NCBI RefSeq assembly: GCF_032444005.1
Contig: NC_091285.1
Coordinates: forward strand, 13,144,001 to 13,208,000
DNA length: 64,000 bases
From: Ranitomeya imitator
Lineage: Eukaryota
Reading direction: 5' to 3'
Shown: piece after piece, positions 8,249 through 63,954 of the stretch
Position numbering within the stretch: the first letter of the stretch is position 1
Layout of the letters: every line of letters begins with the position of its first letter
Notes under the pieces: generated by a model
The model's input: the letters and a program-made list of their open reading frames with translations, nothing else
The model's database searches: none
Told to the model about the DNA's origin: nothing
Made by a program: the position numbers and the translations under genes

Positions 8249-8318
<70 letters not shown>

Positions 8319-10579: not shown

Positions 10580-11250
10580 ACACAGTACGCAAACATGCAC
10601 ACACACACACAGTACGCAGACATGCACACACATACAGTACACAGACATGCACACACACAGTACACAGACATGCACACACACATACGTAGACATGCACACA
10701 CACAGTACGCAGACATGCACACACACAGTACGCAGACATACACAGTACGCAGACATGCACACACATACAGTAGGCAGACATGCACACACATACAGTACGC
10801 AGACATGCACACACACACAGTACGCAGACATGCACAAACATACAATAAGCAGACATGCACACACATACAGTACGCAAACATGCACACACACAGTACGCAA
10901 ACATGCACACAGTACGCAGACATGCACACACACACAGTACGCAGACATGCACACACACAGTACGCAGACATGCACACACACACACACAGTACGCAGACTT
11001 GCACACACACAGTACGCAGGCATGCACACACATACAGTACGCAGACATGCACAAACACACAGTATGCAGACATGCACAAACACACAGTATGCAGACATGC
11101 GCGCACACACACAGTACGCAGACATGCACACACACACAGTACGCAGACATGCACACACACAGTACACAGACATACACACACACAGTACGCAGACATGCAT
11201 ATATACAGTCATACACACAGATATGCACATCATACATGCATACACAGACA
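10580..11250. repeat. CA-rich minisatellite (CACACAGTACGCAGACATG)n; same motif at 8229-8470
   Basis: Direct inspection. The same motif lies on both sides of the nested 8557-10578 element. Confidence 0.9.
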
Positions 11251-18300: not shown

Positions 18301-19425
18301 CTGCCCCATCTCTGCTTAGCACTCTGCCCCATCTCTGTCCAGCACTCTGCCCCATCTCTGTCCAGCACTCTGCCCCATCTCTGCCCAGCACTCTGCCCCA
18401 TCTCTGCCCAGCACTCTGCCCCATCTCTGCCCAGCACTCTGCCCCATCTCTGTCCAGCATATCTGCCCCATCTGTGTCCAGCATATCTGCCCCATCTGTT
18501 TCCAATCCTGCCCCATCTCTGTTCAGCACTCTGCCCCATCTCTGCCCAGCACTCTGCCCCATCTCTGTCCAGCACTCTGCCCCATCTCTGCCCAGCACTC
18601 TGCCCCATCTCTGCCCAGCACGCTGCCCCATCTCTGCCCATCACTCTGCCCCATCTGTGTCCAGCATATCTGCCCCATCTCTGTCCAGCACTCTGCCCCA
18701 TCTCTGCCCAGCACTCTGCCCCATCTCTTCCCAGCACTCTGCCCCATCTCTGTCCAGCACTCTACCCCATCTCTGTCCAGCACTCTACCCCATCTCTGTC
18801 CAGCACTCTGCCCCATCTCTTCCCAGCACTCTGCCCCATCTCTTTCCAGCACTCTGCCCCATCTCTGTCCAGCACTCTGCCCAGCACTCTGCCCCATCTC
18901 TGTCCAGCACTCTGCCCCATCTCTGTCCAGCACTCTGCCCAGCACTCTGCCCCATCTCTGTCCAGCACTCTGCCCCATCTGTGTCCATCTTTTTGCCCCT
19001 GTGTCCAGTGTTCTTCCCTGGGCCCCCGGATCGCCGCTCTCAAGAAAAAAAAAAAAAAAAGAAGTTCTTCTTACCTGGCCGCGCTCCTGCGGCGGGCGAA
19101 GTCTCCACGCAGCTGCAGCGTGCATGCACTCGCCGGCGACTGACAATGATGTCAGACGCCGGCGACATGCACGCACGCTGCGGCTGACGTCAGCTGCCAG
19201 CCTCAGATTGGCTGGCAGCGCCGCGGCTGTTAACTGTTGACGTGCGGGCCCGCTCCTGCACGTCAATAGCTTTAAACAGCTGCAGCGTCGGCGCTAAGGG
19301 CCCGGTTAGCCTGCGGCTGCCGGTAAGGGCCCGATGAGCAGATAAGACGGGGCCCAATGCGGGCCCCCTCTGCTCACCGGGCCCCATACGCCAGTCACGG
19401 CCGTCATGCCCTGATGGCGGCCCTG
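12338..19425. mobile_element. 7.1-kb non-autonomous hAT element carrying a satellite
   Basis: Perfect 8-bp TSD GATCCGAG (12330-12337, 19426-19433). TIR CAGGGCTGCCA / TGGCGGCCCTG matches at 10 of 11. Confidence 0.92.
13400..18985. repeat. 23-bp satellite, about 240 units
   Basis: CAGCACTCTGCCCCATCTCTG(T/C)C in tandem; accounts for all the long repetitive ORFs here. Confidence 0.97.
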
Positions 19426-36197: not shown

Positions 36198-36685
36198 ACT
36201 TTTCCCGAATATCCCCCATCCAATGGAACTCTGTGCCCCAACACGTCCGACTATCAACCACAGTAGGATCCTTCAGACGGAACCTGAAAACTCATCTCTT
36301 CAGGAAAGCCTACAGCCTGCACTGACACCGCTGCTGCCTCACTATCGAAGCTACCGCCTCACCAACACCGGAGCTACAGCCTCACCAACACCGGAGCTAC
36401 CGCCTCACCAACACCGAAGCTACCGCCTCACCAACACCGGAGCTACCGCCTCACCAACACCGGAGCTACCGCCTCACCAACACCGGAGCTCCTGCAACCC
36501 TCAACCTACTGTCTCCTTCCCCATAATCCTGTAGAATGTAAGCACGCAAGGGCAGGGTCCTCGCCCCTCTGTATCAGTCCGTCATTGTTAGTTTGTTTAC
36601 TGTATGTGATATTTGTAACTTGTATGTAACCCCTTCTCATGTACAGCACCATGGAATCAATGGTGCTATATAAATAAATAATAAT
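36198..36685 (+). mobile_element. L2 LINE 3' end inserted in a minisatellite
   Basis: IQWNSVPQHVRLSTTVGSFRRNLKTHLFRKAYSLH* is an L2-type ORF2 C-terminus. The 3' UTR ends in AAATAAATAATAAT. Confidence 0.85.
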
Positions 36686-36689
36686 ATCT

Positions 36690-37620
36690 AGCATTATATG
36701 GGGGTACACAGCAGGATATGAAGGGTATATAACACTATATGGGGGGGTATACAGCAGGATATAGAGGGTATAAAGCACTATATGGGGGAATACAGCAGGC
36801 TATGGTGTATAGCACTATATGGGAGTACACAGCAGGATATGAAGGGTATATAATACTATATGGGGGTACACAGCAGGATATAGAGGGTATATAGCACTAT
36901 ATGGGGGTATAGAGCAGGATATGGAGGGTACATAACACTATATGGGGGTATACAGCAGGATATGGAGGGTATATAACTCTATATGGGGGGTATACAGCAG
37001 GATATAGAGGGTATATAGCATTATATGGGGGTACACAGCAGGATATGAAGGGTATATAGCACTATATGGGGGTACACAGCAGGATATGAAGGGTATATAG
37101 CACTATATGGGGATATTCAGCAGGATATAGAGGGTATATAGCATTATATGGGGGTATACAGCAGGATATGAAGGGTATATAGCACTATATGGGGGTACAC
37201 AGCAGGATATGAAGGGTATATAGCACTATATGGGGGTATACAGCAGGCTATGGAAGGTATATAGCACTATATGGGGGTATAGAGCATTATATGGGGGTAT
37301 ACAGCAGGATATGAAGGGTATATAACACTATATGGGGGTATACAGCAGGATATGAAGGGTATATAGCACTATATGGGGGTATACAGCAGGCTATGGAAGG
37401 TATATAGCACTATATGGGGGTATAGAGCATTATATGGGGGTATACAGCAGGATATGAAGGGTATATAACACTATATGGGGTATACAGCAGGATATAGAGA
37501 GTATATAGCACTATATGGGGGTACACAGCAGGATATGGAGAGTATATAGCACTATATGAATGAGGGTGTACAGCAGGATATGGAGGATATATAATGGCAC
37601 TATATGGGGGTATACAGCAT
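36690..37620. repeat. 41-bp spacer minisatellite; shorter arrays at about 44160-44375 and 61885-62115
   Basis: GGGTATATAGCACTATATGGGGGTACACAGCAGGATATGAA; period 41 (37031 to 37072). Confidence 0.93.
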
Positions 37621-37659
37621 ATACCCTTTGCTCCCCTGACCAATGATGATCTCAGTGAT

Positions 37660-38070
37660 TTCTCAGTCTCACGTCGCCATTGTTCCGAGCAGGAGGACTC
37701 GGGTCTGTGACTAGATGTAACGTCCTCGCGATAAAAGCGGGAAAATGACAGGAAAAAGTGCGGGAAATTCAAAATCCCCAACAGTTCTGTGCTCCGCCCA
37801 CATGTGAGGAGAAGCCGCGGCTCCTTCTGCTGGGGGAGGGGCTGGTGATCGCCCGGTGCCCGGATGGCTGCAGTCTGCTCTGCGGGAGATGGAAACATCG
37901 GATAACAAAGGGTTAACAGCAAGCGTCTGCGGGAAGCGACTCTGTGGGCGGAGCCATAGCCCTACTGAGTGCTGATTGGCTGAGCGCTGAATATGAAATT
38001 CCCGCCCAACGGCTGATAGTTTCTCCCGCTCTTTGTTCTCCTCAGTAACACGTGGTGCAGAGCGCTGTAT
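37660..38070. promoter_or_regulatory. CpG-rich promoter-like block; copies at 44390-44815 and 62130-62560
   Basis: Several GCGGGAAA/TTCCCGC E2F-like sites, an adjacent TTCAAA (CHR-like), a GC box, a CCAAT box and CACGTG. No linked gene found. Confidence 0.55.
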
Positions 38071-38439
38071 GGAGGGAGGGAAATGATATATGGCCGTATA
38101 CAGCGCTATATGGAGGGTGTATGGTACTATTTGGGCATAGACCGCATCACAGGGAGGAATACAGCACGATATACAGTGTATGAGGCATTATATCCTGTCA
38201 CACAGCACTATATGGGGTGTGACACTATCTGGTGATATATAGCACCATAGATGGGGTATTCAGCACTATATGGCCATATATAGCACAATATTAATGCTGA
38301 GGGCGGACACAGCGCTATTTCCAGGGTATATAGTGATATTCTTCACTATATGTGGACATAGTCACAGATAAGGGGGAATGGGAAAGAGTCCGCTCACCCC
38401 AGTGGCAGCACGGAGAAGCCTGGAACCAGCAGAGGCAAA

Positions 38440-38697
38440 ACAGAGGAACGAAAATCCAGCGAGGCCGGAGGTGTGTACGATAAAATCCACATGTATTATA
38501 GAAAGATGAATGAGAAGTGCCCGACAGATCCAGTGTGACCGAGTCCTGCGCCTTCCAGCTCTTCGGGGCCTCAGTCAGGTCACTTATCTTGGGTCTCAGT
38601 CACACTGGATCTGTCGGGCACTTTTAATACAATTTTCTACAATAAATTTGGATGTTATTGTACATGGCTGCCGCCTCAATGGTTTTTTGTTCCTCTA
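38440..38697. repeat. Foldback of about 260 bp in the histone repeat spacer; copies near 47255-47510 and 62955-63205
   Basis: Perfect 25-bp arms at 38515-38539 and 38599-38623, with imperfect outer arms. Confidence 0.85.
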
Positions 38698-39373
38698 TAT
38701 GTGGAAAAAACACTATTTTGATGTACACATCAGTATATAGCGCTATATGGAGGGTTTCAGCTCTATATGTATCTATGCGGCACAATTTGGAGAATATAAA
38801 ACATTACACGGACGTATACAGAACTATATGTTGATATATAGCCCAATACTGAGGTTCAGAGCACTATATGGAGATATGTGATAAAGACAAGGAGCCTCAC
38901 CTTAAAAATGAGCAGTAGCTGCCCCGTCCTTTTACTGTAAACAATATCTATAACTCTGTACGTAACCCCCTTCTCATGTACAGCACCATGGAATTAATGG
39001 TGCTATATAAATAAATAATATATTAGGGCAGAGCATTCGTGTTACTGACAGGTGAGCATTTCCCTCACATCCTGTGTCTAGATGTGAGGATTGGGGGGAT
39101 CTAGGGTGATGATGAGGGGGCTCCACTATACAGCGCAGTGTACGGGGATATGGAAGTACAGCGCCATCAGAGGCCGCTGCTGCAGAAGCCTCGTGTAGAC
39201 ATGATGTGACCCTTCCTGCATTATCGCAGCCCGTAACCAGTGTGAACAGTGGAGACCCAGCAGCACTTCATGCAGGGGGGACCAGCAAGATTACTGGGAG
39301 TTGTGCTGAGCTTCCCCTGCATAATGATTGGACGCAGACAACCAATGGAGTGTAGGGGGTGTGTTTGACATAA

Positions 39374-43994: not shown

Positions 43995-45033
43995 TCTATT
44001 TTCAGCAGTTTCTCATTGTTCTGTTCCAAATGTTCTGATATAACGCACCGGTCACTCCCCAGACCAGAGGCTCCTGATCAATGATGAACTCACAATCACT
44101 GATCTGTCTGGGTCTGAATCCCACTGGTTTATCGCAGCCGGAGCTACAAGAGCAAAGCACAGCACGGAGGGTGTATAGCGCTATACAGGGGTATAAGGCA
44201 CAATATGGATGTATATGGGGGGTATAAAGGGGGATATAGATGGTATATAGCACTATATGGGAGTATTCAGCAGGATATGGAGGAGATACAGCACACTATA
44301 GCGGTATACAGCAAGATATGGAGGTTATACGGCAATATATTGGAGTATACAGTAGGATATGGGGGTGTACAGAACTATGTGCATCTGTGATTTCTCTCGG
44401 TCTCCCGCCGCCATTGTTCCGAGCAGGAGGTCACCAGGGAGGACTCGGGTCTGTGACTAGATGTAACGTCCTCGCGAAAAAATGCGGGAAAATGACAGGA
44501 AAAAGTGCGGGAAATTCAAAATCCCCAACAGTTCTGTGCTCCGCCCACATGTGAGGAGAAGCCGCGGCTCCTGCTGCTGGGGGAGGGGCTGGTGATCGCC
44601 CGGTGCCCGGATGGCTGCAGTCTGCTCTGCGGGAGCTGGACACGTAGGACACTAAAGGGTTAACACCAGGTGTCTGCGGGAAGCGACTCTGTGGGCGGAG
44701 CCATAGCCCTACTGAGTGCTGATTGGCTGAGCGCTGAATATGAAATTCCCGCCCAACGGCTGATAGTTTCTCCCGCTCTTTGTTCTCCTCAGTAACACGT
44801 GGTGCAGAGCGTTATATGGAGGGAGGGAAATGATATATGGCCGTATACAGCGCTATATGGAGGGTGTATGGTACTATATGCACATGCTAGCCACCTTAGG
44901 GAGAGACCCAAGTTGGGCTAAATGTAGCGGGACGAAAGAGACCGAAAAGCCCTCTACTTAAAGGAAATACATAGTGGATGCTTTCCTGAAACGGAAAGTA
45001 CTTGCAAGCAGCATAATACAAAGAATAGCTGGT

Positions 45034-45072
45034 TTACCCAGAATCCTTTGCAGTAGGCGGAGCTATGCAAAT
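45034..45072. promoter_or_regulatory. snRNA-type distal sequence element (SPH/Staf site, GC box, octamer), repeated every 384 bp
   Basis: TTACCCAGAATCCTTTGCA (45034-45052), GGCGGAG (45056-45062) and ATGCAAAT (45065-45072). Confidence 0.8.
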
Positions 45073-45170
45073 CATCTCTTTCCACCCCAGTCTAATCCAC
45101 AGCGCTTGGAACCGCCAAGCGTGCAATGCTGCGGATTAGTTTCTAAATTTACACAGCCAACCAATTCCTA

Positions 45171-45214
45171 CCTGTGGACACGTGTTTCGGGCTTTAGGCC
45201 CTCATCAGCACAGG
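45171..45214 (-). ncRNA. Type I hammerhead ribozyme, copy 1
   Basis: Minus strand CCUGUG-CUGAUGA-GGGC-cuaaa-GCCC-GAAA-CACGUG-UC^CACAGG. All core nucleotides are canonical, with a GUC triplet; predicted cut between 45177 and 45176. Confidence 0.95.
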
Positions 45215-45278
45215 GCTGGAATTGGTTGGCTGTATGGAGTGGGGCTCGGTGAGCAAGCGATACACACATGCTAGCCAC

Positions 45279-45289
45279 CTTAGGGAGAG
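45279..45289 (-). promoter_or_regulatory. PSE-like motif, repeated every 384 bp (first copy at 44895-44905)
   Basis: Minus strand CTCTCCCTAAG resembles the Xenopus U1/U2 PSE core TCTCCNNATG (consensus from memory). It lies 160 nt from the octamer and points toward the ribozyme. Confidence 0.55.
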
Positions 45290-45554
45290 ACCCAAGTTGG
45301 GCTAAATGTAGCGGGACGAAAGAGACCGAAAAGCCCTCTACTTAAAGGAAATACATAGTGGATGCTTTCCTGAAACGGAAAGTACTTGCAAGCAGCATAA
45401 TACAAAGAATAGCTGGTTTACCCAGAATCCTTTGCAGTAGGCGGAGCTATGCAAATCATCTCTTTCCACCCCAGTCTAATCCACAGCGCTTGGAACCACC
45501 AAGCGTGCAATGCTGCGGATTAGTTTCTAAATTTACACAGCCAACCAATTCCTA

Positions 45555-45598
45555 CCTGTGGACACGTGTTTCGGGCTTTAGGCCCTCATCAGCACAGG
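45555..45598 (-). ncRNA. Type I hammerhead ribozyme, copy 2
   Basis: Identical to copy 1, offset +384. Confidence 0.95.
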
Positions 45599-45938
45599 GC
45601 TGGAATTGGTTGGCTGTATGGAGTGGGGCTCGGTGAGCAAGCGATACACACATGCTAGCCACCTTAGGGAGAGACCCAAGTTGGGCTAAATGTAGCGGGA
45701 CGAAAGAGACCGAAAAGCCCTCTACTTAAAGGAAATACATAGTGGATGCTTTCCTGAAACGGAAAGTACTTGCAAGCAGCATAATACAAAGAATAGCTGG
45801 TTTACCCAGAATCCTTTGCAGTAGGCGGAGCTATGCAAATCATCTCTTTCCACCCCAGTCTAATCCACAGCGCTTGGAACCGCCAAGCGTGCAATGCTGC
45901 GGATTAGTTTCTAAATTTACACAGCCAACCAATTCCTA

Positions 45939-45982
45939 CCTGTGGACACGTGTTTCGGGCTTTAGGCCCTCATCAGCACAGG
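45939..45982 (-). ncRNA. Type I hammerhead ribozyme, copy 3
   Basis: Identical to copy 1, offset +768. Confidence 0.95.
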
Positions 45983-46322
45983 GCTGGAATTGGTTGGCTG
46001 TATGGAGTGGGGCTCGGTGAGCAAGCGATACACACATGCTAGCCACCTTAGGGAGAGACCCAAGTTGGGCTAAATGTAGCGGGACGAAAGAGACCGAAAA
46101 GCCCTCTACTTAAAGGAAATACATAGTGGATGCTTTCCTGAAACGGAAAGTACTTGCAAGCAGCATAATACAAAGAATAGCTGGTTTACCCAGAATCCTT
46201 TGCAGTAGGCGGAGCTATGCAAATCATCTCTTTCCACCCCAGTCTAATCCACAGCGCTTGGAACCGCCAAGCGTGCAATGCTGCGGATTAGTTTCTAAAT
46301 TTACACAGCCAACCAATTCCTA

Positions 46323-46366
46323 CCTGTGGACACGTGTTTCGGGCTTTAGGCCCTCATCAGCACAGG
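46323..46366 (-). ncRNA. Type I hammerhead ribozyme, copy 4
   Basis: Identical to copy 1, offset +1152. Confidence 0.95.
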
Positions 46367-46706
46367 GCTGGAATTGGTTGGCTGTATGGAGTGGGGCTCG
46401 GTGAGCAAGCGATACACACATGCTAGCCACCTTAGGGAGAGACCCAAGTTGGGCTAAATGTAGCGGGACGAAAGAGACCGAAAAGCCCTCTACTTAAAGG
46501 AAATACATAGTGGATGCTTTCCTGAAACGGAAAGTACTTGCAAGCAGCATAATACAAAGAATAGCTGGTTTACCCAGAATCCTTTGCAGTAGGCGGAGCT
46601 ATGCAAATCATCTCTTTCCACCCCAGTCTAATCCACAGCGCTTGGAACCGCCAAGCGTGCAATGCTGCGGATTAGTTTCTAAATTTACACAGCCAACCAA
46701 TTCCTA

Positions 46707-46750
46707 CCTGTGGACACGTGTTTCGGGCTTTAGGCCCTCATCAGCACAGG
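46707..46750 (-). ncRNA. Type I hammerhead ribozyme, copy 5
   Basis: Identical to copy 1, offset +1536. Confidence 0.95.
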
Positions 46751-47566
46751 GCTGGAATTGGTTGGCTGTATGGAGTGGGGCTCGGTGAGCAAGCGATACA
46801 CACATGCTAGCCACCTTAGGGAGAGACCCAAGTTGGGCTAAATGTAGCGGGACGAAAGAGACCGAAAAGCCCTCTACTTAAAGGAAATACATAGTGGATG
46901 CTTTCCTGAAACGGAAAGTACTTGCAAGCAGCATAATACCTGGTACTATATGGGCATAGACCGCATCACAGGGAGGAATACAGCACGATATGCAGTGTAT
47001 GAGGCATTATATCCTGTCACACAGCACTATATGGGGTGTGACACTATCTGGCGATATATAGCACCATAGATGAGGTATTCAGCACTATATGGCCATATAT
47101 AGCACAATATTAATGCTGAGGGCGGACACAGCGCTATTTCCAGGGTATATAGGGATATTCTTCACTATCTGTGGACATAGTCATAGAGAAGGGGGAATGG
47201 GAGAGAGTCCGCTCACCCGAGTGGCAGAAGCCTGGAACCAGCAGAGGCAAAACAGAGGAACGAAAATCCAGCGAGGCCGGAGGTGTGTACGATAAAATCC
47301 ACATGTATTATAGAAAGATGAATGAGAAGTGCGCGACAGATCCAGTGTGACCGAGTCCTGCGCCTTCCAGCTCTTCGGGGCCTCGGTCAGGTCACTTATC
47401 TTGGGTCTCAGTCACACTGGAACTGTCGGGCACTTTTAATACATTTTTCTAGAATAAATTTGGATGTTATTGTACATGGCTGCCGCCTCGATGGTTTTTT
47501 GTTCCTCTATATGTGGAAAAAACACTATTTTGATATACACATCAGTATATAGCACTATATGGAGGG

Positions 47567-50500
47567 TGTTGTGAATTCTGTGGCTGAGTTCACTTCTGTG
47601 GTCACAAGTGGTATTGCAGTCTCTGGGCTTCCTCCCTCAGGTGTTTTGGTGAGCTCGTTGGCTGCCTTGCTATTTAGCTCCACCTGAGTCTGTCTTCCTT
47701 GCTCCTTGTCATTGTTCCAGTGTTGGATCTGAGCTACTGCATCTTTCCTTGGGCCTGCTGCTCTGCTAGATAAGTGCTTCTAGTTTGTTTTCTGTTTTTT
47801 CTGTCCAGCTTGCTATTATCTTTTGCTGGAAGCCCTGAGAAGCAAAGGGGTGCACCGCCGTGCTGTTAGTTCGGCACGGTGGGTCTTTTTGCCCCTTTGC
47901 GTGGTTTTCGTTTTAGGGTTTTTTGTAGACTGCATAGTTCTCTTTGCTATCCTCGCTCTGTCTAGAATATCGGGCCTCACTTTGCTGAATCTATTTCATT
48001 CCTACGTTTGTCTTTTCATCTTGCTAACAGTCATTATATGTGGGGGGCTGCCTATTCCTTTGGGGTATTTCTCTGAGGTAAGTCAGGCTTGTATTTCTAT
48101 CTTCAGGCTAGTCAGCTCCTCAGGCAGTGCCGAGTTGCATAGGTAGTTATAGGCGCAATCCACTGCTGCTTATAGTTGTGTGAGGATAGATCAGGTACTG
48201 CAGTCTACAGAGATTCCACGTCTCAGAGCTCGTCCTATTGTTTTTGGTTATTGCCAGATCTCTGTATGTGCGCTGATTACTGCACGCTGTGTTGCCTGAT
48301 TGCCGGCCATAACAGTACAAGGAGCCACACCAATGATTCCCAATAGAGGGAAAAAAGAAATCCTGACATCATTTTTTTTTCTTAGCTCTGTCTTCAGTCT
48401 TTTTTTTCCCCTAGACATTAGAGTGCTTCAGGACACAGCTGTGGACATGGATATTCAGGCTCTGTGCTCCTCAATGGATAATCTCGTTGTAAATGTACAA
48501 AAGATTCAAGATACTATTGATCAGAAATCGATGCTAGAACCAAGAATTCCGATTCCTGATTTGTTTTTTGGTGACAGAACTAAGTTCCTGAGCTTCAGAA
48601 ATAATTGTAAGCTATTTTTGGCCTTGAAACCTCATTCTTCTGGTAATCCTATTCAACAGGTTTTGATTATTATTTCTTTTTTGCGCGGCGACCCACAGGA
48701 CTGGGCGTTTTCTCTTGCACCAGGAGATTCTGCTTTGAGTAATGTTGATGCATTTTTCCAGGCGCTGGGATTGCTTTACGATGAGCCTAATTCAGTGGAT
48801 CAGGCTGAGAAAAATCTGCTGGCTTTATGCCAGGGTCAGGATGATATAGAAGTATATTGTCAGAAATTTAGAAAGTGGTCAGTACTCACTCTGTGGAATG
48901 AATCTGCACTAGCGGCTTTGTTCAGAAAGGGTCTCTCTGAAGCTCTTAAGGATGTAATGGTGGGATTTCCTATGCCTGCTGGTTTGAATGAGTCCATGTC
49001 CTTGGCCATTCAGATCGGTCGTCGCTTGCGCGAGCGTAAATCTGTGCACCATCTGGCGGTATTGTCTGAGAGTAAACCTGAGCCTATGCAGTGCGACAGG
49101 ACTATGACTAAAGTAGAACGGCAAGAACACAGACGTCTGAACAGACTGTGTTTCTATTGTGGTGATTCTACTCATGCTATTTCTAATTGTCCTAAACGCA
49201 CTAGGTGGTTCGATAGCTCTGCCGTTATTGGTACTGTACAGTCCAAATTCCTTTTGTCCATTACCTTAATGTGCTCTTTGTCATCGTATTCTGTCATGGC
49301 GTTTGTGGATTCAGGCGCTGCCCTGAATCTGATGGATTTGGATTATGCTAAACGTTGTGGGTTTTTCTTGGAGCCTTTGCGGTGTCCTATTCCGTTGAGA
49401 GGAATTGATGCTACACCTTTGGCCAAGAATAAGCCTCAGTACTGGGCCCAGCTGACCATGTGCATGGCTCCTGCACATCAGGAAGTTATTCGCTTTCTGG
49501 TACTGCATAATTTGCATGATGTGGTCGTGTTGGGGTTGCCATGGCTACAAACCCATAGTCCAGTATTGGATTGGAACTCTATGTCGGTAACCAGCTGGGG
49601 TTGTCAGGGAGTACATGGTGATGTTCCATTTTTGTCTATTTCGTCATCCATTCCTTCTGACATCCCAGAGTTCTTGTCGGACTTTCAGGATGTATTTGAA
49701 GAGTCCAAGTCTGATGCCCTACCTCCGCATAGGAATTGTGATTGTGCTATCGATTTGATTCCTGGTAGTAAATTCCCTAAGGGTCGTTTATTTAATTTGT
49801 CCGTACCTGAACACACCGCTATGCGCAGTTATGTGAAGGAGTCCCTGGAGAAGGGACATATTCGCCCATCGTCGTCACCATTGGGAGCAGGGTTCTTTTT
49901 TGTAGCCAAGAAGGATGGTTCGCTAAGACCGTGTATTGATTACCGCCTTCTTAATAAGATCACTGTTAAGTTTCAGTATCCCTTGCCATTGATTTCTGAC
50001 TTGTTTGCTCGGATTAAGGGGGCTAGTTGGTTCACCAAGATAGATCTTCGTGGTGCGTATAATCTGGTGAGAATCAGGCAAGGAGATGAATGGAAAACGG
50101 CATTTAATACGCCCGAGGGTCATTTTGAGTATCTGGTGATGCCGTTCGGACTTGCCAATGCTCCATCTGTTTTTCAGTCTTTTATGCATGACATTTTCCG
50201 TGAGTATCTGGATAAATTCTTGATTGTTTACTTGGATGACATTTTGATCTTCTCAGATGATTGGGAGTCTCATGTGAAGCAAGTCAGAATGGTTTTCCAG
50301 GTACTGCGTGCTAATTCCTTGTTCGTGAAGGGATCAAAGTGTCTCTTCGGTGTGCAGAAAGTTTCATTTTTGGGGTTCATCTTTTCCCCTTCTACTATCG
50401 AGATGGATCCGGTTAAGGTTCAGGCCATCCAGGATTGGACTCAGCCGACATCTCTAAAAAGTCTGCAGAAATTCCTGGGCTTTGCTAATTTTTATCGTCG

Positions 50501-53255
50501 CTTCATCTGTAATTTTTCTAGCATTGCCAGACCATTGACCGATTTGACCAAGAAGGGTGCTGATTTGGTTAATTGGTCTTCTGCTGCCGTGGAAGCTTTT
50601 CAGGAGTTGAAGCGTCGTTTTTGCTGTGCCCCTGTGTTGTGTCAACCTGATGTTTCTCTTCCGTTCCAGGTCGAGGTTGATGCTTCTGAGATTGGTGCAG
50701 GGGCGGTTTTGTCACAGAGAGGTTCTGGTTGCTCAGTGTTCAAACCATGTGCTTTCTTTTCCAGGAAATTTTCTGCTGCTGAGCGTAATTATGATGTGGG
50801 CAACCGAGAGTTGCTGGCCATGAAGTGGGCATTCGAGGAGTGGCGTCATTGGCTTGAGGGTGCTAAGCATCGCGTGGTGGTTTTGACTGATCATAAGAAC
50901 CTTACTTATCTTGAGTCTGCCAAGCGCTTGAATCCTAGACAGGCCCGTTGGTCGTTATTTTTTGCTCGTTTTGATTTTGTGGTTTCATACCTTCCGGGCT
51001 CTAAAAATGTGAAGGCGGATGCTCTGTCTAGGAGTTTTGTGCCCGACTCTCCGGGGTTATCTGAGCCGGCGAGTATCCTCAAGGAAGGAGTCATTGTGTC
51101 TGCCATCTCCCCTGATTTGCGGAGAGTGTTGCAGAAATTTCAGGCTAATAAACCTGATCGTTGTCCGGCCGAGAAACTGTTCGTCCCTGATAGGTGGACT
51201 AGTAAAGTTATCTCTGAACTTCATTGTTCGGTGCTGGCCGGTCATCCAGGAATCTTTGGTACCAGGGAGTTGGTTGCTAGATCCTTCTGGTGGCCATCTC
51301 TGTCACGGGATGTGCGTGCTTTTGTGCAGTCCTGTGGAATTTGTGCTAGGGCTAAGCCCTGCTGTTCACGTGCCAGTGGGTTGCTTTTGCCCTTGCCGGT
51401 CCCGAAGAGGCCTTGGACACATATTTCGATGGATTTCATTTCTGACCTTCCCGTTTCTCAAAAAATGTCGGTCATTTGGGTGGTCTGTGATCGCTTTTCT
51501 AAAATGGTCCATCTGGTGCCCTTGGTTAAATTGCCTTCCTCCTCTGATTTGGTGCCTTTGTTCTTCCAGCATGTGGTTCGTTTACATGGCATTCCTGAGA
51601 ATATTGTTTCTGACAGAGGTTCCCAGTTTGTCTCGAGGTTCTGGCGAGCCTTTTGTGGTAGGATGGGCATTGACCTATCTTTCTCCTCGGCCTTCCATCC
51701 TCAGACTAATGGCCAGACCGAACGAACCAATCAGACCTTGGAAACATATCTGAGATGTTTTGTTTCCGCTGACCAGGATGATTGGGTGTCATTTTTGCCG
51801 TTGGCTGAGTTCGCCCTTAATAATCGGGCCAGCTCGGCTACCTTGGTCTCTCCATTTTTCTGCAATTCTGGGTTCCATCCTCGTTTCTCTTCAGGACAGG
51901 TTGAGTCTTCGGACTGTCCTGGTGTGGATTCTGTGGTGGACAGGTTGCAGCAGATCTGGACTCAGGTGGTGGACAATTTGACCTTGTCCCAGGAGAAGGC
52001 TCAGCTTTTCGCTAATCGCAGACGCCGTGTGGGACCCCGACTTCGTGTTGGGGATCTGGTTTGGTTATCTTCTCGTCATATTCCTATGAAGGTTTCCTCT
52101 CCTAAATTTAAACCTCGTTTTATTGGTCCGTATAGGATTTCTGAGATTCTCAATCCGGTGTCTTTTCGTCTGACCCTCCCAGACTCCTTTTCCATACATA
52201 ATGTATTCCATAGGTCGTTGTTGAGGAGATACGTGGCACCTATGGTTCCATCTGTGGAGCCTCCTGCCCCTGTTTTGGTGGAGGGGGAATTGGAGTATAT
52301 TGTGGAGAAGATTTTGGATTCTCGTGTCTCTAGACGGAAACTCCAGTATCTGGTCAAATGGAAGGGTTATGCTCAGGAAGATAATTCCTGGGTTTTTGCC
52401 TCTGATGTCCATGCCCCAGATCTTGTTCGTGCCTTTCATGTGGCTCATCCTGGTCGGCCTGGGGGTTCTGGTGAGGGTTCGGTGACCCCTCCTCAAGGGG
52501 GGGGCACTGTTGTGAATTCTGTGGCTGAGTTCACTTCTGTGGTCACAAGTGGTATTGCAGTCTCTGGGCTTCCTCCCTCAGGTGTTTTGGTGAGCTCGTT
52601 GGCTGCCTTGCTATTTAGCGCCACCTGAGTCTGTCTTCCTTGCTCCTTGTCATTGTTCCAGTGTTGGATCTGAGCTACTGCATCTTTCCTTGGGCCTGCT
52701 GCTCTGCTAGATAAGTGCTTCTAGTTTGTTTTCTGTTTTTTCTGTCCAGCTTGCTATTATCTTTTGCTGGAAGCCCTGAGAAGCAAAGGGGTGCACCGCC
52801 GTGCTGTTAGTTCGGCACGGTGGGTCTTTTTGCCCCTTTGCGTGGTTTTCGTTTTAGGGTTTTTTGTAGACTGCATAGTTCTCTTTGCTATCCTCGCTCT
52901 GTCTAGAATATCGGGCCTCACTTTGCTGAATCTATTTCATTCCTACGTTTGTCTTTTCATCTTGCTAACAGTCATTATATGTGGGGGGCTGCCTATTCCT
53001 TTGGGGTATTTCTCTGAGGTAAGTCAGGCTTGTATTTCTATCTTCAGGCTAGTCAGCTCCTCAGGCAGTGCCGAGTTGCATAGGTAGTTATAGGCGCAAT
53101 CCACTGCTGCTTATAGTTGTGTGAGGATAGATCAGGTACTGCAGTCTACAGAGATTCCACGTCTCAGAGCTCGTCCTATTGTTTTTGGTTATTGCCAGAT
53201 CTCTGTATGTGCGCTGATTACTGCACGCTGTGTTGCCTGATTGCCGGCCATAACA
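47567..53255 (+). mobile_element. Intact Ty3/Gypsy chromovirus (Tf1/sushi-like) LTR retrotransposon
   Basis: 748-bp TG...CA LTRs (47567-48314, 52508-53255). PPT G-run before the 3' LTR. TSD GGAGGG, with empty sites near 38750 and 63260. Confidence 0.98.
48447..52628 (+). CDS. Gag-Pol polyprotein, single ORF of about 1393 aa
   Basis: Gag, CCHC knuckle CFYCGDSTHAISNC, protease DSGA, RT YLDD, RNase H, integrase (HHCC; MDFI, SDRG, QTERTN) and chromodomain YIVEKILD...YLVKWKGY. The start codon is inferred. The ORF ends inside the 3' LTR. Confidence 0.96.
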   Translation: MDIQALCSSMDNLVVNVQKIQDTIDQKSMLEPRIPIPDLFFGDRTKFLSFRNNCKLFLALKPHSSGNPIQQVLIIISFLRGDPQDWAFSLAPGDSALSNVDAFFQALGLLYDEPNSVDQAEKNLLALCQGQDDIEVYCQKFRKWSVLTLWNESALAALFRKGLSEALKDVMVGFPMPAGLNESMSLAIQIGRRLRERKSVHHLAVLSESKPEPMQCDRTMTKVERQEHRRLNRLCFYCGDSTHAISNCPKRTRWFDSSAVIGTVQSKFLLSITLMCSLSSYSVMAFVDSGAALNLMDLDYAKRCGFFLEPLRCPIPLRGIDATPLAKNKPQYWAQLTMCMAPAHQEVIRFLVLHNLHDVVVLGLPWLQTHSPVLDWNSMSVTSWGCQGVHGDVPFLSISSSIPSDIPEFLSDFQDVFEESKSDALPPHRNCDCAIDLIPGSKFPKGRLFNLSVPEHTAMRSYVKESLEKGHIRPSSSPLGAGFFFVAKKDGSLRPCIDYRLLNKITVKFQYPLPLISDLFARIKGASWFTKIDLRGAYNLVRIRQGDEWKTAFNTPEGHFEYLVMPFGLANAPSVFQSFMHDIFREYLDKFLIVYLDDILIFSDDWESHVKQVRMVFQVLRANSLFVKGSKCLFGVQKVSFLGFIFSPSTIEMDPVKVQAIQDWTQPTSLKSLQKFLGFANFYRRFICNFSSIARPLTDLTKKGADLVNWSSAAVEAFQELKRRFCCAPVLCQPDVSLPFQVEVDASEIGAGAVLSQRGSGCSVFKPCAFFSRKFSAAERNYDVGNRELLAMKWAFEEWRHWLEGAKHRVVVLTDHKNLTYLESAKRLNPRQARWSLFFARFDFVVSYLPGSKNVKADALSRSFVPDSPGLSEPASILKEGVIVSAISPDLRRVLQKFQANKPDRCPAEKLFVPDRWTSKVISELHCSVLAGHPGIFGTRELVARSFWWPSLSRDVRAFVQSCGICARAKPCCSRASGLLLPLPVPKRPWTHISMDFISDLPVSQKMSVIWVVCDRFSKMVHLVPLVKLPSSSDLVPLFFQHVVRLHGIPENIVSDRGSQFVSRFWRAFCGRMGIDLSFSSAFHPQTNGQTERTNQTLETYLRCFVSADQDDWVSFLPLAEFALNNRASSATLVSPFFCNSGFHPRFSSGQVESSDCPGVDSVVDRLQQIWTQVVDNLTLSQEKAQLFANRRRRVGPRLRVGDLVWLSSRHIPMKVSSPKFKPRFIGPYRISEILNPVSFRLTLPDSFSIHNVFHRSLLRRYVAPMVPSVEPPAPVLVEGELEYIVEKILDSRVSRRKLQYLVKWKGYAQEDNSWVFASDVHAPDLVRAFHVAHPGRPGGSGEGSVTPPQGGGTVVNSVAEFTSVVTSGIAVSGLPPSGVLVSSLAALLFSAT

Positions 53256-53890
53256 GGAGGGTTTCAGCAGTATATGTATCTATACGGCACAATTTGAAGG
53301 GCATAAAACACTACACGGACGTATACAGAACTATATGTTGATATATAGCCCATTACTGACGTTCAGAGCACTATATGGAGATATGTGATAAAGACAAGGA
53401 GCCTCACCTTAAAAATGAGCAGTAGCTGCCCCGTCCTTTTACTGTAAACAATAGCTATAACTCTGTACGTAACCCCCTTCTCATGTACAGCACCATGGAA
53501 TTAATGGTGCTATATAAATAAATAATATAGGGGCAGAGCATTCATGTTACTGATGTCTGGATGTGGGGCGCTATGTGAGGATTGGGGGGATCTAGGGTGA
53601 TGATGAGGGGGCTCCACTATACAGCGCAGTGTACGGGGATATGGAAGTACAGCGCCATCAGAGGCCGCTGCTGCAGAAGCCTCGTGTAGACATGATGTGA
53701 CCCTTCCTGCATTATCGCAGCCTGTAACCAGTGGGAACCGTGGAGACTCAGCAGCACTTCATGGAGGGGGGACCAGCAAGATTACTGTGAGTTGTGCTGA
53801 GCTTCCCCTGCATAATGATTGGACGCAGACAACCAATGGAGTGTGGGGTGTGTTTGACATAAACCAATGAGAAAGATCACATGAGTATAA

Positions 53891-61701: not shown

Positions 61702-63954
61702 TTAGCGATATTTTCAGCAGTTTCTCATTGTTATGTTCAAAATATTCTAACGATATAACGCAGCGGTCACTCCCCGGACCAGAGGCTCCTGATCATTGGT
61801 GAACTCACAATCACTGATCTATGTCTGGGTCTGAATCCCACTGGTTTATCGCAGCCGGAGCTACAAGAGCAAAGCACAGGAGGGTGTATAGCGCTATACA
61901 GGGGTATAATATGGATTTATACAGCACTATATGGGGTATAAAGGAGGATATGGAGGGTATATAGCACTATATGGGGGTATGAAGGATATATAGCACTATA
62001 TGTAGTATATAGCAGGATATGGAGAAGTTACAGCAAAATATAGCGTTATACAGCAATATATGGGGGTACACAGTAGGATATAGGGGGCAAATAGCAATGT
62101 ATGGGGGTATACAGAACTATGTGTATCTGTGATTTCTCTCGGTCTCCCGCCGCCATTGTTCTGAGCAGGAGGTCACCGGGGAGGACTCAGGGCTGTGATT
62201 AGATGTAACGTCCTCGCGATAAAAGCGGGAAAATGACAGAAAAAAGTGCGGGAAATTCAAAATCCCCAACAGTTCTGTGCTCCGCCCACATGTGAGGAGA
62301 AGCCGCGGCTCCTGCTGCTGGGGGAGGGGCTGGTGATCGCCCGGTGCCCGGATGGCTGCAGTCAGCTCTGCGGGAGCTGGAAACATCGGATACTAAAGGG
62401 TTAACACCACGTGTCTGCGGGGAAGTGACCCAGTGGGCGGAGCCATAGCCCTACTGAGTGCTGATTGGCTGAGCGCTGAATATGAAATTCCCGCCCAACG
62501 GCTGATAGTTTCTCCCGGTCTTTGTTCTCCTCAGTAACACGTGGTGCAGAGCGTTATATGGAGGGAAGGAAATGATATATGACCGTATACAGCACTATAT
62601 GGAGGGTGTATGGTACTATATGGGCATAGACCGCATCACAGGGAGAAATACAGCACGATATGCAGTGTATGAGGCATTATATCCTGGCACACAGCACTAT
62701 ATGGGGTGTATAAGGTATTATATGGGGTGTGACACTATCTGGCGATATATAGCACCATAGATGAGGTATTCAGCACTATATGGCCATATATAGCACACTA
62801 TTAATGCTGAGGGCGGACACAGCGCTATTTCCAGGGTATATAGGGATATTCTTCACTATATGTGGACACAGTCATAGAGAAGGGGGAATGGGAGAGAGTC
62901 CGCTCACCCCAGTGGCAGCACGGAGAAGCCTGGAACCAGCAGAGGCAAAACAGAGGAACGAAAATCCAGCGAGGCCGGAGGTGTGTACGATAAAATCCAC
63001 ATGTATTATAGAAAGATGAATGAGAAGTGCGCGACAGATCCAGTGTGACCGAGTCCTGCGCCTTCCAGCTCTTCGGGGCCTCAGTCAGGTCACTTATCTT
63101 GGGTCTCAGTCACACTGGAACTGTCGGGCACTTTTAATACATTTTTCTAGAATAAATTTGGATGTTATCGTACATAGCTGCCGCCTCGATGGTTTTTTGT
63201 TCCTCTATATGTGGAAAAAACACTATTTTGATATACACATCAGTATATAGCACTATATGGAGGGTTTCAGCAGTATATGTATCTATACGGCACAATTTGG
63301 AGGGCATAAAACACTACACGGACGTATACAGAACTATATGTTGATATATAGCCCAATACTGACGTTCAGAGCACTATATGGAGATATGTGATAAAGACAA
63401 GGAGCCTCACCTTAAAAATGAGCAGTAGCTGCCCCGTCCTTTTACTGTAAACAATAGCTATAACTCTGTACGTAACCCATTTCTCATGTACAGCACCATG
63501 GAATTAATGGTGCTATATAAATAAATAATATAGGGGCAGAGGATTCATGTTACTGACAGGTGAGCATTTCCCTCACATCCTATGTCTAGATGTTGGGCGC
63601 TATGTGAGGATTGGGGGGATCTAGGGTGATGATGAGGGGGCTCCACTATACAGCTCAGTGTACGGGGATATGGAAGTACAGCGCCCTCAGAGGCCGCTGC
63701 TGCAGAAGCCTCGTGGAGACATGATGTGACCCTTCCTGCATTATCGCAGCACTTCATGCAGGGGGGACCAGCAATATTACTGGGAGTTGTGCTGAGCTTC
63801 CCCTGCATAATGATTGTATGCAGACAACCAATGGAGTGTAGGGGGCGTGTTTCACATAAACCAATGAGAACGATCACGAGTATAAATACCCTGCTCTTGT
63901 TGCTCTTCTCATTACATCTGTGTTCCTTCATCTCTACAGAGTACAGACAGAGCT

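What the first reader, a model, noticed from the sequence alone, without database searches (positions are those of the whole stretch)
44881..46940. Hammerhead-ribozyme tandem array (retrozyme / newt satellite-2-like) inserted in a histone repeat
Seen: five near-identical 384-bp units plus a partial one, with only one substitution noticed (45498). Each carries, on the minus strand, a fully canonical type I hammerhead CUGAUGA...GAAA...GUC^. Established: tandem repeats of a few hundred nt with one hammerhead per unit define animal non-LTR retrozymes and newt satellite 2, which self-cleave to monomers and give linear or circular RNAs. Inference: this is a young, non-coding, ribozyme-bearing retroelement. 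A minus-strand multimer transcript would release four 384-nt monomers. The family is best known from salamanders, and whether this anuran version is described needs checking.
Basis: partly seen in the sequence, partly recalled or inferred. Interest (0 to 1): 0.95.

Follow-up and report, generated by a model that had tools for sequence, protein, structure and literature searches.

The report
Frog hammerhead retrozyme array, freshly inserted
A 2-kb tandem array of a 384-bp non-coding repeat, each unit carrying a self-cleaving hammerhead ribozyme, was inserted recently into one copy of a frog histone gene repeat; this kind of mobile element (non-LTR retrozyme) is already described in frogs, but here the untouched sister repeats show exactly how it went in.

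Summary
Positions 44881-46939 hold five 384-bp units plus 139 bp, and the only difference is at 45498. Each full unit carries a type I hammerhead on the minus strand. Its core is canonical, helix I is 6 bp with a long extension, helix II is 4 bp, and helix III is minimal and palindromic. The best Rfam match is HH9 (30.1 bits, E 6.6e-5), which is below the gathering score.

New here: a perfect 12-bp target-site duplication (TGGTACTATATG) flanks the array. Two paralogous histone repeat units in the same window carry that site once, with no array. The array is therefore a recent transposition-type insertion, not a local satellite.

Contigs from other public runs suggest a fixed left end, variable right ends and a much greater abundance than the flank. 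One adapter junction lies exactly at the predicted cleavage site.

Best reading: a young non-LTR retrozyme copied from a multimeric or circular minus-strand RNA by target-primed reverse transcription, probably with Penelope-like element enzymes. The class is already described in Xenopus (2010-2026 papers), and this scan noted many other hammerhead arrays on other DNA of the same genome. In vitro self-cleavage, circular RNA and the source of the reverse transcriptase remain untested.

The parts
44881..46939 (-). Retrozyme array of 5 full 384-bp units plus a 139-bp partial unit (46801-46939). The partial unit is the 5'-truncated end on the ribozyme strand.
   Evidence: Units are identical except at 45498.
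45148..45236 (-). Extended type I hammerhead of unit 1, repeated at +384, +768, +1152 and +1536. Helix I is CCUGUG/CACAGG plus an internal loop and a 12-18-bp extension. Helix II is GGGC/GCCC with loop CUAAA. Helix III is A-U and C-G closed by ACGU. The predicted cleavage GUC^C lies at 45177|45176; the other sites are 45561|45560, 45945|45944, 46329|46328 and 46713|46712.
   Evidence: Sequence. Rfam HH9 hits at 30.1 bits, E 6.6e-5. Monomer and dimer folds. Covariation of helices I and II in a 36-sequence alignment.
44869..44880 (.). Left copy of the 12-bp target-site duplication, TGGTACTATATG.
46941..46952 (.). Right copy of the 12-bp target-site duplication, TGGTACTATATG. One extra base precedes it (C at 46940, which is G at the 5' junction on the ribozyme strand); it belongs to neither the unit nor the target.
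38122..38133 (.). Empty site in a paralogous histone repeat unit. The site is present once (TGGTACTATTTG) with no array. Flank identity is 85% on the left and 96% on the right.
62611..62622 (.). Second empty site in another paralogous unit. The site is present once (TGGTACTATATG) with no array. Flank identity is 88% on the left and 94% on the right.
45498..45498 (-). The only substitution among the units. It is CpG to TpG on the ribozyme strand and looks like deamination after insertion.
45056..45072 (-). Perfect octamer ATTTGCAT (45065-45072) followed 2 nt later by CTCCGCC (45056-45062), repeated in each unit. This is a candidate snRNA-type distal promoter element and remains a hypothesis.
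   Evidence: The motif assignment rests on general knowledge of the Oct-1 site. Newt satellite 2 is reported to use an snRNA-type promoter (Coats 1994, as cited in PMC2220036).
44894..44906 (-). TCTCTCCCTAAGG, about 165 bp downstream of the octamer and about 55-60 bp upstream of the 5' edge of the extended hammerhead, repeated in each unit. This is a candidate proximal element and remains a hypothesis.
   Evidence: Its likeness to the frog PSE is recalled from memory and was not verified.

Best explanation
This is a young copy of a non-LTR retrozyme, a non-coding, hammerhead-bearing, non-autonomous retroelement.

Shown:
- A 2,059-bp head-to-tail multimer (5.36 units) was inserted into an AT-rich spot of one histone-repeat spacer.
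- The insertion made a 12-bp target-site duplication and added one extra base at one junction.
- Sister repeats keep the empty site.

Inferred life cycle:
1. The minus strand is transcribed, possibly from an snRNA-type promoter inside the unit.
2. Adjacent hammerheads pair through the palindrome ACACGUGU into a double hammerhead, or use the long helix I as an extended single hammerhead. [quoted passage not shown]
3. A host tRNA ligase closes the monomers into very stable circles.
4. A reverse transcriptase/endonuclease, most likely from a Penelope-like element, nicks AT-rich DNA and starts cDNA synthesis at a fixed internal site of the RNA. That site is monomer position about 296, which is 88 nt upstream of the cleavage site.
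5. The enzyme runs round the circle, or along an uncut multimer, more than five times, giving the tandem array with a truncated 5' unit.

The confidence of 0.75 is for the whole statement. That this is a retrozyme-type array inserted with a target-site duplication is about 0.9. The Penelope-like helper and the rolling-circle step are about 0.55.
For: Insertion: the flanks align to two paralogous units whose left and right alignments overlap by exactly the 12 bp that are duplicated here.

Young age: there is 1 substitution in 2,059 bp, and it is a CpG transition. The duplicated target copies are identical, while the paralogous flanks differ by 4-15%.

Single template: every unit carries T at the position equivalent to 45030/45798, where contigs of eight other runs all read A.

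Template longer than one unit, and not a cleaved linear monomer: on the ribozyme strand the array ends at monomer positions 158 (5') and 296 (3'), neither of which is the cleavage site.

Fixed 3' end and variable 5' ends, as expected for a retroelement: three contigs from three other runs (X4, X12, X20) leave the unit into unrelated, AT-rich flanks within 3 nt of this array's left end. Breaks on the other side fall at many unit positions.

Ribozyme: the core is canonical. All 12 pairs are formed, and helices I and II covary across 35 unrelated hammerheads with the same helix III. In that alignment 94.4% of cells are paired, against 23-47% when the partners are slid. The double-hammerhead fold is about 10.7 kcal/mol better than two monomers.

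RNA: the monomer folds at -155 kcal/mol with z = -7.6. In run X20 one contig joins the reverse complement of the Illumina small-RNA 5' adapter to the unit, so that a minus-strand RNA would begin at 45944, which is +1 of the predicted cleavage.

Literature:
- Amphibian retrozymes have weak helix III hammerheads that act as dimers, give circular RNAs, and show target-site duplications above 4 bp 'when present' (PMC7229834).
- Xenopus non-LTR retrozymes are related to Penelope-like element terminal repeats (10.64898/2026.07.22.740005).
- Penelope-like element insertions are 5'-truncated partial tandems with a bias toward repeats (PMC8557442).

First-reader notes of this scan report many Penelope-like elements and 14-15-bp target-site duplications in the same genome (not checked here).
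Against: - No run on record as RNA holds the unit, and all runs are contigs, so expression, strand and circles are not shown.
- The adapter junction is one contig in one run. The same adapter sequence is used in some DNA protocols and, reversed, as a 3' adapter in PRO-seq.
- The hammerhead scores below every Rfam gathering threshold.
- In the 2026 preprint, 8 of 9 Xenopus retrozyme dimers did not cleave in vitro at 6 mM Mg. This family was not among those tested, because none of their primers matches the unit.
- No Penelope-like element lies in the window, and no homology of the unit to one could be tested.
- The nearest reverse transcriptase is a Ty3/gypsy element 630 bp away. Its own 5-6-bp duplication does not fit a 12-bp one.
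- The copy number could have grown after insertion by unequal crossing-over.
- The promoter motifs are post hoc, and the PSE likeness is from memory.
Confidence: 0.75

Rival explanations
1. Insertion of a short element followed by local satellite growth. Only about 1.4-2.4 units were inserted, and unequal crossing-over or replication slippage later raised the number to 5.4.
For: Tandem repeats expand this way, and the 2026 preprint favours local amplification for retrozyme arrays. The units are nearly identical, which either route can produce.
Against: The insertion itself must already have been longer than one unit, because its two ends overlap by 139 bp of unit sequence. The array is very young. 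This rival only changes how many rounds the reverse transcriptase made, not what the element is.
Confidence: 0.25
2. The element is mobilised by a LINE, in the manner of a SINE, rather than by a Penelope-like element. A LINE endonuclease and reverse transcriptase copied the RNA.
For: A 12-bp target-site duplication, 5' truncation and an extra base at the 5' junction are also typical of LINE-mediated insertions (general knowledge).
Against: There is no poly(A) and no 3' microsatellite tail at either end. The 3' end is internal to the repeat unit. The literature links type I hammerhead repeats phylogenetically to Penelope-like element terminal repeats (10.64898/2026.07.22.740005; PMC7761336).
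Confidence: 0.12
3. DNA-level route. An extrachromosomal circular DNA from another array was amplified by rolling-circle replication and was captured at a staggered break.
For: Satellite repeats are known to form circular DNA (general knowledge). The ends of the array do not coincide with the RNA cleavage site.
Against: A clean 12-bp duplication, a recurrent terminus shared by independent copies and variable opposite ends are hallmarks of target-primed reverse transcription, not of break capture.
Confidence: 0.05
4. The hammerhead is catalytically dead or irrelevant. The array is a mobile repeat whose ribozyme motif is a passenger inherited from a Penelope-like element terminal repeat, and it yields no self-cleaved or circular RNA.
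For: In the preprint, 8 of 9 Xenopus dimers were inactive in vitro. The Anolis Penelope-like element hammerhead needs protein and is dispensable for insertion in vitro. The Rfam score is below gathering.
Against: Every core nucleotide and all three helices are intact in all five copies. The architecture is the canonical loop-loop type, not the minimal Penelope-like element type. One adapter junction lies exactly at the predicted cleavage site.
Confidence: 0.15

Closest known systems
Non-LTR retrozymes of amphibians (axolotl: Cervera & de la Pena 2020, PMC7229834; Xenopus families: Li, Clavereau & Pollet 2026 preprint, 10.64898/2026.07.22.740005)
   Same: Tandem units of 150-450 bp with one type I hammerhead each. 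There is no ORF, LTR, PBS or PPT, and GC is below 50%. Helix III is weak and palindromic, so a dimeric mode is expected. The predicted monomer RNA is highly self-paired. The target-site duplication is longer than 4 bp.
   Different: The family could not be matched to any named Xenopus family, and none of the preprint's primers fits it. This locus shows a filled site beside two empty paralogous sites, an extra junction base and a recurrent 3' terminus. I did not find these details in the papers I read. RNA circles were not tested here.
Newt satellite 2 (Epstein & Gall 1987; extended hammerhead, Pabon-Pena 1991; snRNA-type promoter, Coats 1994, as cited in PMC6155905 and PMC2220036)
   Same: A repeat of about 330-390 bp in an amphibian. 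It has a type I hammerhead with a minimal palindromic helix III and an internally looped extension of helix I. An internal octamer/PSE-like promoter layout is possible.
   Different: This is a frog, not a salamander. Here the element is a dispersed low-copy array with a target-site duplication rather than a large satellite block. Sequence homology to the newt repeat was not testable, and the promoter is only a motif-level guess.
Hammerheads in the terminal repeats of Penelope-like elements (Cervera & de la Pena 2014, PMC4209133; Frangieh 2024, PMC11167929)
   Same: Head-to-tail partial tandems with 5' truncation, AT-rich targets, a 3' end set by internal initiation of reverse transcription, and a hammerhead inside the repeated part.
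   Different: There is no RT/GIY-YIG ORF here. The hammerhead is the canonical form (helix I 6 bp, helix II 4 bp, with loops), not the minimal Penelope-like element form (helix II 7-8 bp, helix I 4-5 bp). No 30-40-bp 'tail' was recognised.
Rfam Hammerhead_HH9 (RF02275), the conserved intronic hammerhead of amniotes
   Same: It is the best-scoring Rfam model, matched over all 77 positions. It shares the core, the 4-bp helix II with an A-rich loop and the UA bulge 3' of helix I. Perreault 2011 (PMC3088659) already noted the striking likeness between these amniote ribozymes and the Xenopus repeat hammerheads.
   Different: The score is 30.1 bits against a gathering score of 52. Helix III is shorter. 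The context is a tandem mobile repeat, not a conserved intron.
Plant LTR retrozymes (Cervera 2016, PMC4918200)
   Same: A non-autonomous, non-coding retroelement with hammerheads, thought to spread through circular RNA.
   Different: The plant elements have type III hammerheads inside LTRs, a tRNA-Met PBS, a PPT and 4-bp duplications, and they depend on Ty3/gypsy. None of these features is present here, although a young Ty3/gypsy element happens to lie 630 bp away.

Membership tests
Hammerhead ribozyme, type I | Conserved core C3-U-G-A-N-G-A9, G12-A-A14 and a cleavage triplet N-U-H (here GUC). | tested here: met
   CUGAUGA, GAAA and GUC^C are present in all five full units.
Hammerhead ribozyme, type I | Three helices around the core, with helix I open-ended, supported by covariation. 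| tested here: met
   The window sequence forms all 12 pairs. In an alignment with 35 metagenomic hammerheads that share helix III, 94.4% of cells are paired, there are 130 double-sided changes, and slid controls give 23-47%. Helix III is invariant because of how the set was chosen, so it is not tested.
Hammerhead ribozyme, type I | Score at or above an Rfam gathering threshold. | tested here: not met
   The best match is HH9 at 30.1 bits against 52. Nothing passes at gathering.
Hammerhead ribozyme, type I | Mg-dependent self-cleavage at the predicted site. | not testable with these tools
   There is only a hint: one contig in run X20 joins a 5'-adapter sequence to position +1 of the predicted product.
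Non-LTR retrozyme | Tandem repeats of about 150-450 bp, each with a type I hammerhead. | tested here: met
   384-bp units in 5.4 copies with five hammerheads.
Non-LTR retrozyme | Non-coding, without LTRs, and GC below 50%. | tested here: met
   The longest ORF in a trimer is 96 aa and GC is 49.0%. No terminal repeats other than the units themselves are present. PBS and PPT motifs were not searched for specifically.
Non-LTR retrozyme | Mobile: target-site duplication longer than 4 bp and dispersed copies. | tested here: met
   A 12-bp duplication with two empty paralogous sites. Other junctions and wrap-around contigs appear in eight other runs.
Non-LTR retrozyme | Expressed as linear and circular RNA of unit length. 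| not testable with these tools
   No run on record as RNA holds the unit, and contigs cannot show circles.
Non-LTR retrozyme | Stable, highly self-paired monomer RNA. | tested here: met
   -155.3 kcal/mol, z = -7.64, and 0 of 100 shuffles fold as well.
Newt satellite 2 | Sequence homology to the roughly 330-bp newt repeat. | not tested
   No newt sequence was available in any tool.
Newt satellite 2 | Internal snRNA-type promoter (octamer-containing DSE plus PSE). | tested here: inconclusive
   A perfect octamer plus CTCCGCC lies about 165 bp upstream of a TCTCTCCC block, with the right geometry. The PSE consensus could not be checked, and no expression data were available.
Penelope-like element (autonomous) | An ORF with a telomerase-like RT and a GIY-YIG endonuclease. 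| tested here: not met
   The unit has no ORF. The only RT in the window is Ty3/gypsy.
Plant-type LTR retrozyme | Type III hammerheads in LTRs, PBS, PPT and a 4-bp target-site duplication. | tested here: not met
   The hammerhead is type I, there are no LTRs, and the duplication is 12 bp.

The most novel reading that the evidence does not exclude
Frog non-LTR retrozymes may be self-contained transcription units. Each unit would carry an snRNA-type Pol II promoter (octamer plus GC-box element at about -225, PSE-like block at about -60) that starts RNA right at the 5' edge of the hammerhead, as reported for newt satellite 2. New copies would be made by a Penelope-type enzyme that starts cDNA at one fixed internal site, 88 nt upstream of the cleavage site, and runs several times round a 384-nt RNA circle. 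On this reading the locus, with its two empty sister sites, would be a natural record of a single rolling-circle retro-insertion.
Probability: 0.25. Interest if true: 0.55.

Novelty: new member of a known kind. Interest (0 to 1): 0.4.

Why it matters
Non-LTR retrozymes are known, but how they move is still inferred. The reviews state that the repeats show no motif that points to the helper element (PMC7761336). The newest Xenopus survey leaves open whether arrays arise by rolling-circle insertion or by local amplification (10.64898/2026.07.22.740005).

This locus gives a clean filled site beside empty sites within one gene family. It shows an exact 12-bp duplication, a more-than-unit-length insertion whose ends are not the ribozyme cut site, and hints of a fixed 3' terminus. 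It is therefore a good template for a genome-wide junction analysis and for a retrotransposition assay.

It does not change what is known about the class. Insertion in a histone spacer has no evident consequence for the histone genes.

Tried and rejected
- Rfam at gathering thresholds found no ribozyme in the window. A whole-window scan at E <= 0.01 found only histone stem-loops and one weak miRNA-family match, and even lost the HH9 hits because of stricter filters. No second ribozyme or Penelope-type hammerhead was seen in the window.
- Exact search for the hammerhead with its helix II found nothing in metagenome and viral contig collections. A looser pattern gave 40 metagenome contigs that share only the ribozyme with the unit, not the rest of it.
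- Primers for the nine Xenopus retrozymes tested in the 2026 preprint do not match this unit, so no family name could be assigned.
- Two 30-nt sequences that continue from the unit in other runs were not found in the window.
- Coats 1994, Pabon-Pena 1991 and de la Pena 2010 are not held in the paper library. The newt promoter and the frog PSE consensus therefore rest on a citing sentence and on memory.
- The supplement of PMC7229834 holds no sequence with an octamer.
- Ty3/gypsy as helper was considered and rejected. Its own duplication is 5-6 bp, and the array has no LTR. PBS and PPT motifs were not searched for.
- Pol III transcription was considered unlikely, because each unit has a TTTT run on the ribozyme strand.
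- Precise deletion from both paralogs, instead of insertion here, was rejected as less parsimonious and at odds with the near-identity of the units.
Full report
**1.

Tandem Repeats Finder reports one array at 44881-46939 with period 384, 5.4 copies, 99% matches and no indels. Direct comparison of the units shows five complete 384-bp units and a 139-bp partial unit (46801-46939). The single difference is A at 45498, where the other four units have G. On the ribozyme strand this is a CpG-to-TpG change, the typical mark of deamination after insertion. The periodicity stops exactly at 44880/44881 and 46939/46940.

**2. The ribozyme**

Read on the minus strand, every full unit contains ...CCAACCAAUUCC-AGC-CCUGUG-CUGAUGA-GGGC-CUAAA-GCCC-GAAA-C-ACGU-G-UC^CACAGG-UA-GGAAUUGGUUGG.... 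All core positions are canonical.
- Helix I is 6 bp, followed by an internal loop and a 12-18-bp extension.
- Helix II is 4 bp, starts with the G-C pair and has an A-rich loop.
- Helix III is only A-U and C-G closed by the tetraloop ACGU.
- Cleavage is predicted after GUC, at 45177|45176 and every 384 bp up to 46713|46712.

At Rfam gathering thresholds nothing is found. With E-value thresholds, five hits to Hammerhead_HH9 (RF02275) appear at 30.1 bits and E 6.6e-5. They cover the full model length but lie below the gathering score of 52. That HH9 is the best model agrees with Perreault et al. 2011, who pointed out the striking similarity between the conserved amniote intronic hammerheads and the repeat-associated hammerheads of Xenopus (PMC3088659).

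For an independent test of the fold, I collected hammerheads with the same helix III from metagenome contigs: 40 loci, of which 35 distinct sequences had enough flanking sequence to use. They share nothing else with the unit. In the 36-sequence alignment:
- the window's ribozyme forms all 12 pairs;
- 94.4% of cells are paired, against 23-47% when partners are slid;
- all six helix I pairs and three of the four helix II pairs show changes on both sides.

Helix III and the core are invariant because of how the set was chosen and are therefore not tested.

The stretch ACACGUGU is an 8-nt palindrome. A co-fold of two copies forms the classical double hammerhead with an 8-bp helix III and is 10.7 kcal/mol better than two monomers. 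This is the architecture described for newt and axolotl ribozymes. Those act poorly as single motifs and well as dimers (PMC7229834; PMC4209133; PMC6155905). Newt ribozymes can also use an internally looped extension of helix I (PMC6155905), which this unit has.

**3. It is an insertion, shown by empty sister sites**

The window is a histone gene cluster. H3, H2A and H2B genes and eleven histone 3' stem-loop matches recur. The sequence left of the array (44169-44880) aligns to 37416-38133 and 61709-62622. The sequence right of it (46941-47567) aligns to 38122-38755 and 62611-63265.

In both paralogs the left and right alignments overlap by exactly 12 bp. An alignment with the array removed shows a 13-bp surplus in the filled copy. 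That surplus is the second copy of TGGTACTATATG plus one extra C at 46940. The array is therefore flanked by a perfect 12-bp target-site duplication, and two sister repeats keep the unoccupied site.

The paralogous flanks differ from the filled copy by 4-15%, while the units differ at 1 of 2,059 positions. The insertion is therefore much younger than the histone-repeat duplications. Two precise deletions in the paralogs would be a far less economical account.

**4. What the ends say**

I number the monomer from the cleavage site on the ribozyme strand. The array then starts at position 158 (its 5' end, at 46939, preceded by one untemplated G) and ends at position 296 (its 3' end, at 44881). 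Neither end is the ribozyme cut site. The two ends also overlap by 139 nt of unit sequence. The template therefore cannot have been a cleaved linear monomer. It was longer than a unit: either an uncut multimer or a circle copied more than five times.

All units share T at the position equivalent to 45030/45798, where contigs of eight other runs read A. This fits copying from one template molecule.

**5. Other copies and a hint of RNA**

The scan's run index finds the unit in 20 runs from 10 studies and several coded organisms. None is on record as RNA, and all are kept as contigs.

Laid on the unit, small runs give wrap-around contigs ('goes back 383/384'). They give none on the histone spacer 44560-44871, so the unit is far more abundant than its flank. 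Whether that abundance is DNA copies or RNA cannot be told.

Three contigs from three runs (X4, X12, X20) leave the unit into unrelated AT-rich sequence within 3 nt of this array's left end. On the other side, breaks fall at many unit positions: 67, 163, 213, 220, 256, 369 and 383. This suggests a fixed 3' end and variable 5' ends, the signature of a retroelement whose RNA is the ribozyme strand. It rests on few contigs. A second recurrent boundary, at monomer position about 204-210, is unexplained.

In run X20 one contig continues from 45946 into TCGTCGGACTGTAGAACTC. With the two ambiguous bases GA, this is the reverse complement of GTTCAGAGTTCTACAGTCCGACGATC, the Illumina small-RNA 5' adapter. 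Read that way, a minus-strand RNA begins at 45944, exactly +1 of the predicted cleavage product.

This is the only direct hint of cleavage in vivo, and it has caveats:
- it is one contig in one run;
- the adapter is also used in some DNA protocols and, reversed, as a 3' adapter in PRO-seq;
- ligation to a 5'-OH end would need a kinase step.

**6. Properties of the RNA and the unit**

The 384-nt monomer folds at -155.3 kcal/mol, and none of 100 shuffles folds as well (z = -7.64). Helix I is closed by the rest of the molecule, as described for retrozyme circles (PMC7229834, PMC7761336). The unit is 49% GC, and its longest ORF in a trimer is 96 aa.

On the ribozyme strand the unit has:
- a perfect octamer ATTTGCAT followed by CTCCGCC at positions 105-121;
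- a TCTCTCCCTAAGG block at 271-283;
- the extended hammerhead from about position 329.

The spacing is about 165 bp between the two blocks, and about 55-60 bp from the second block to the hammerhead. This is the geometry of vertebrate snRNA promoters. Newt satellite 2 is reported to be transcribed from such a promoter (Coats 1994, as cited in PMC2220036).

I could not read that paper or check the frog PSE consensus, so this stays a hypothesis. A TTTT run in each unit argues against long Pol III transcripts.

**7. Most likely mechanism**

The class-level model in the literature has four steps: transcription, hammerhead cleavage, ligation by a host tRNA ligase into circles, and reverse transcription of the circle into multimeric cDNA (PMC7229834; PMC7761336). 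Penelope-like elements are the probable helpers. The 2026 preprint finds 57 Xenopus retrozyme families, 24 of them homologous to Repbase elements (21 Penelope-like elements and REP4_XT), and places nearly every family next to Penelope-like element terminal repeats in a tree.

A purified Anolis Penelope-like element enzyme cuts AT-rich DNA. [quoted passage not shown] Penelope-like element insertions are 5'-truncated partial tandems with a bias toward repeats (PMC8557442).

This locus fits on every structural point: an AT-rich target inside a minisatellite-like spacer, a 12-bp duplication, an internal 3' end, a truncated 5' unit and a head-to-tail structure. First-reader notes of this scan report many Penelope-like elements, and hammerhead-bearing insertions with 14-15-bp duplications, elsewhere in the same genome. 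I did not check those notes.

What is shown is the insertion, its anatomy and its youth. Transcription, cleavage, circles and the identity of the reverse transcriptase are inferred.

**8. Cautions**

In the preprint, 8 of 9 Xenopus retrozyme dimers did not cleave in vitro, and only a REP4 element of X. tropicalis did. The Anolis Penelope-like element hammerhead needs protein and is dispensable for insertion in vitro. None of the preprint's primers matches this unit, so its activity is unknown. The number of units may have changed after insertion by unequal crossing-over. A LINE helper cannot be excluded on the duplication alone, although there is no poly(A) or microsatellite tail.

**9. Verdict**

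Repeat-associated hammerheads of Xenopus were reported in 2010-2014, non-LTR retrozymes were defined in 2020, and Xenopus families were surveyed in 2026. The same genome yielded hundreds of hammerhead notes in this scan.

The value of this locus is as an unusually clean natural 'before and after' of one retrozyme insertion. It offers a few testable leads: a fixed 3' terminus, an snRNA-like promoter layout and an adapter junction at the cut site.

Noticed in passing
window 47567-53256: An intact, young Ty3/gypsy (chromovirus-type) LTR retrotransposon lies 630 bp from the array. Its 749-bp LTRs are 99.87% identical with TG...CA ends. It has one 1,442-aa gag-pol ORF (48300-52628) with RT, RNase H, integrase and chromodomain, and a 5-6-bp duplication (G)GAGGG. 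It is absent from both paralogous histone units, so two recent insertions hit the same spacer.
   Followed up: partly
window 13462-18987: A 5.5-kb minisatellite of a 23-bp unit (TCTGCCCCATCTCTGTCCAGCAC, about 240 copies) with strong C-over-G skew. It explains the pile of long overlapping ORFs there. Further CA-rich and CCATCA-type repeats lie at 8256-11199.
   Followed up: partly
window 20975-60652: A histone cluster with H3, H2A and H2B genes in diverged repeat units. Eleven matches to the histone 3' stem-loop model were found, eight of them just below the Rfam gathering score (31.5-33.6 against 34 bits). No H4 or H1 gene was confirmed among the ORFs I scanned.
   Followed up: partly
window 44232-44378 and 36685-37620: The spacer that received the array is built of a degenerate 20/41-bp 'ATATAG/ACAGCA' minisatellite, which is much expanded in the paralog at 36.7-37.6 kb. 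The retrozyme target lies at its edge. This recalls the repeat-insertion bias described for Penelope-like elements.
   Followed up: no
window 47254-47508 (also 38442-38696, 62952-63206): A stretch of about 255 bp that matches its own reverse complement at about 72%, forming a long imperfect palindrome. It is conserved in all three paralogous spacers.
   Followed up: no
run X20, junction at window 45944-45946: One contig joins the reverse complement of the Illumina small-RNA 5' adapter to the unit exactly at +1 of the predicted hammerhead cleavage product. X20 also shows 130 unit-derived contigs at 85-100% identity, so it may be a small-RNA library rich in retrozyme fragments.
   Followed up: partly
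loci L001-L040 (metagenome contigs); L036:930-962 and 2345-2377: Forty environmental contigs carry type I hammerheads with the identical palindromic helix III (GAAACACGUGUC) but unrelated surroundings. L036 has two copies 1,415 bp apart on the same strand. This helix III variant is therefore widespread outside amphibians.
   Followed up: partly
runs X4, X17, X20: unit positions equivalent to window 44967 / 45735-45741: A second recurrent boundary (monomer position about 204-210) where contigs from three runs leave the unit into different sequences. In addition, two junctions at 45689 and 45732 continue into the same foreign sequence in both X17 and X20. These may be chimeric or related elements that share only the 3' part of the unit.
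   Followed up: no
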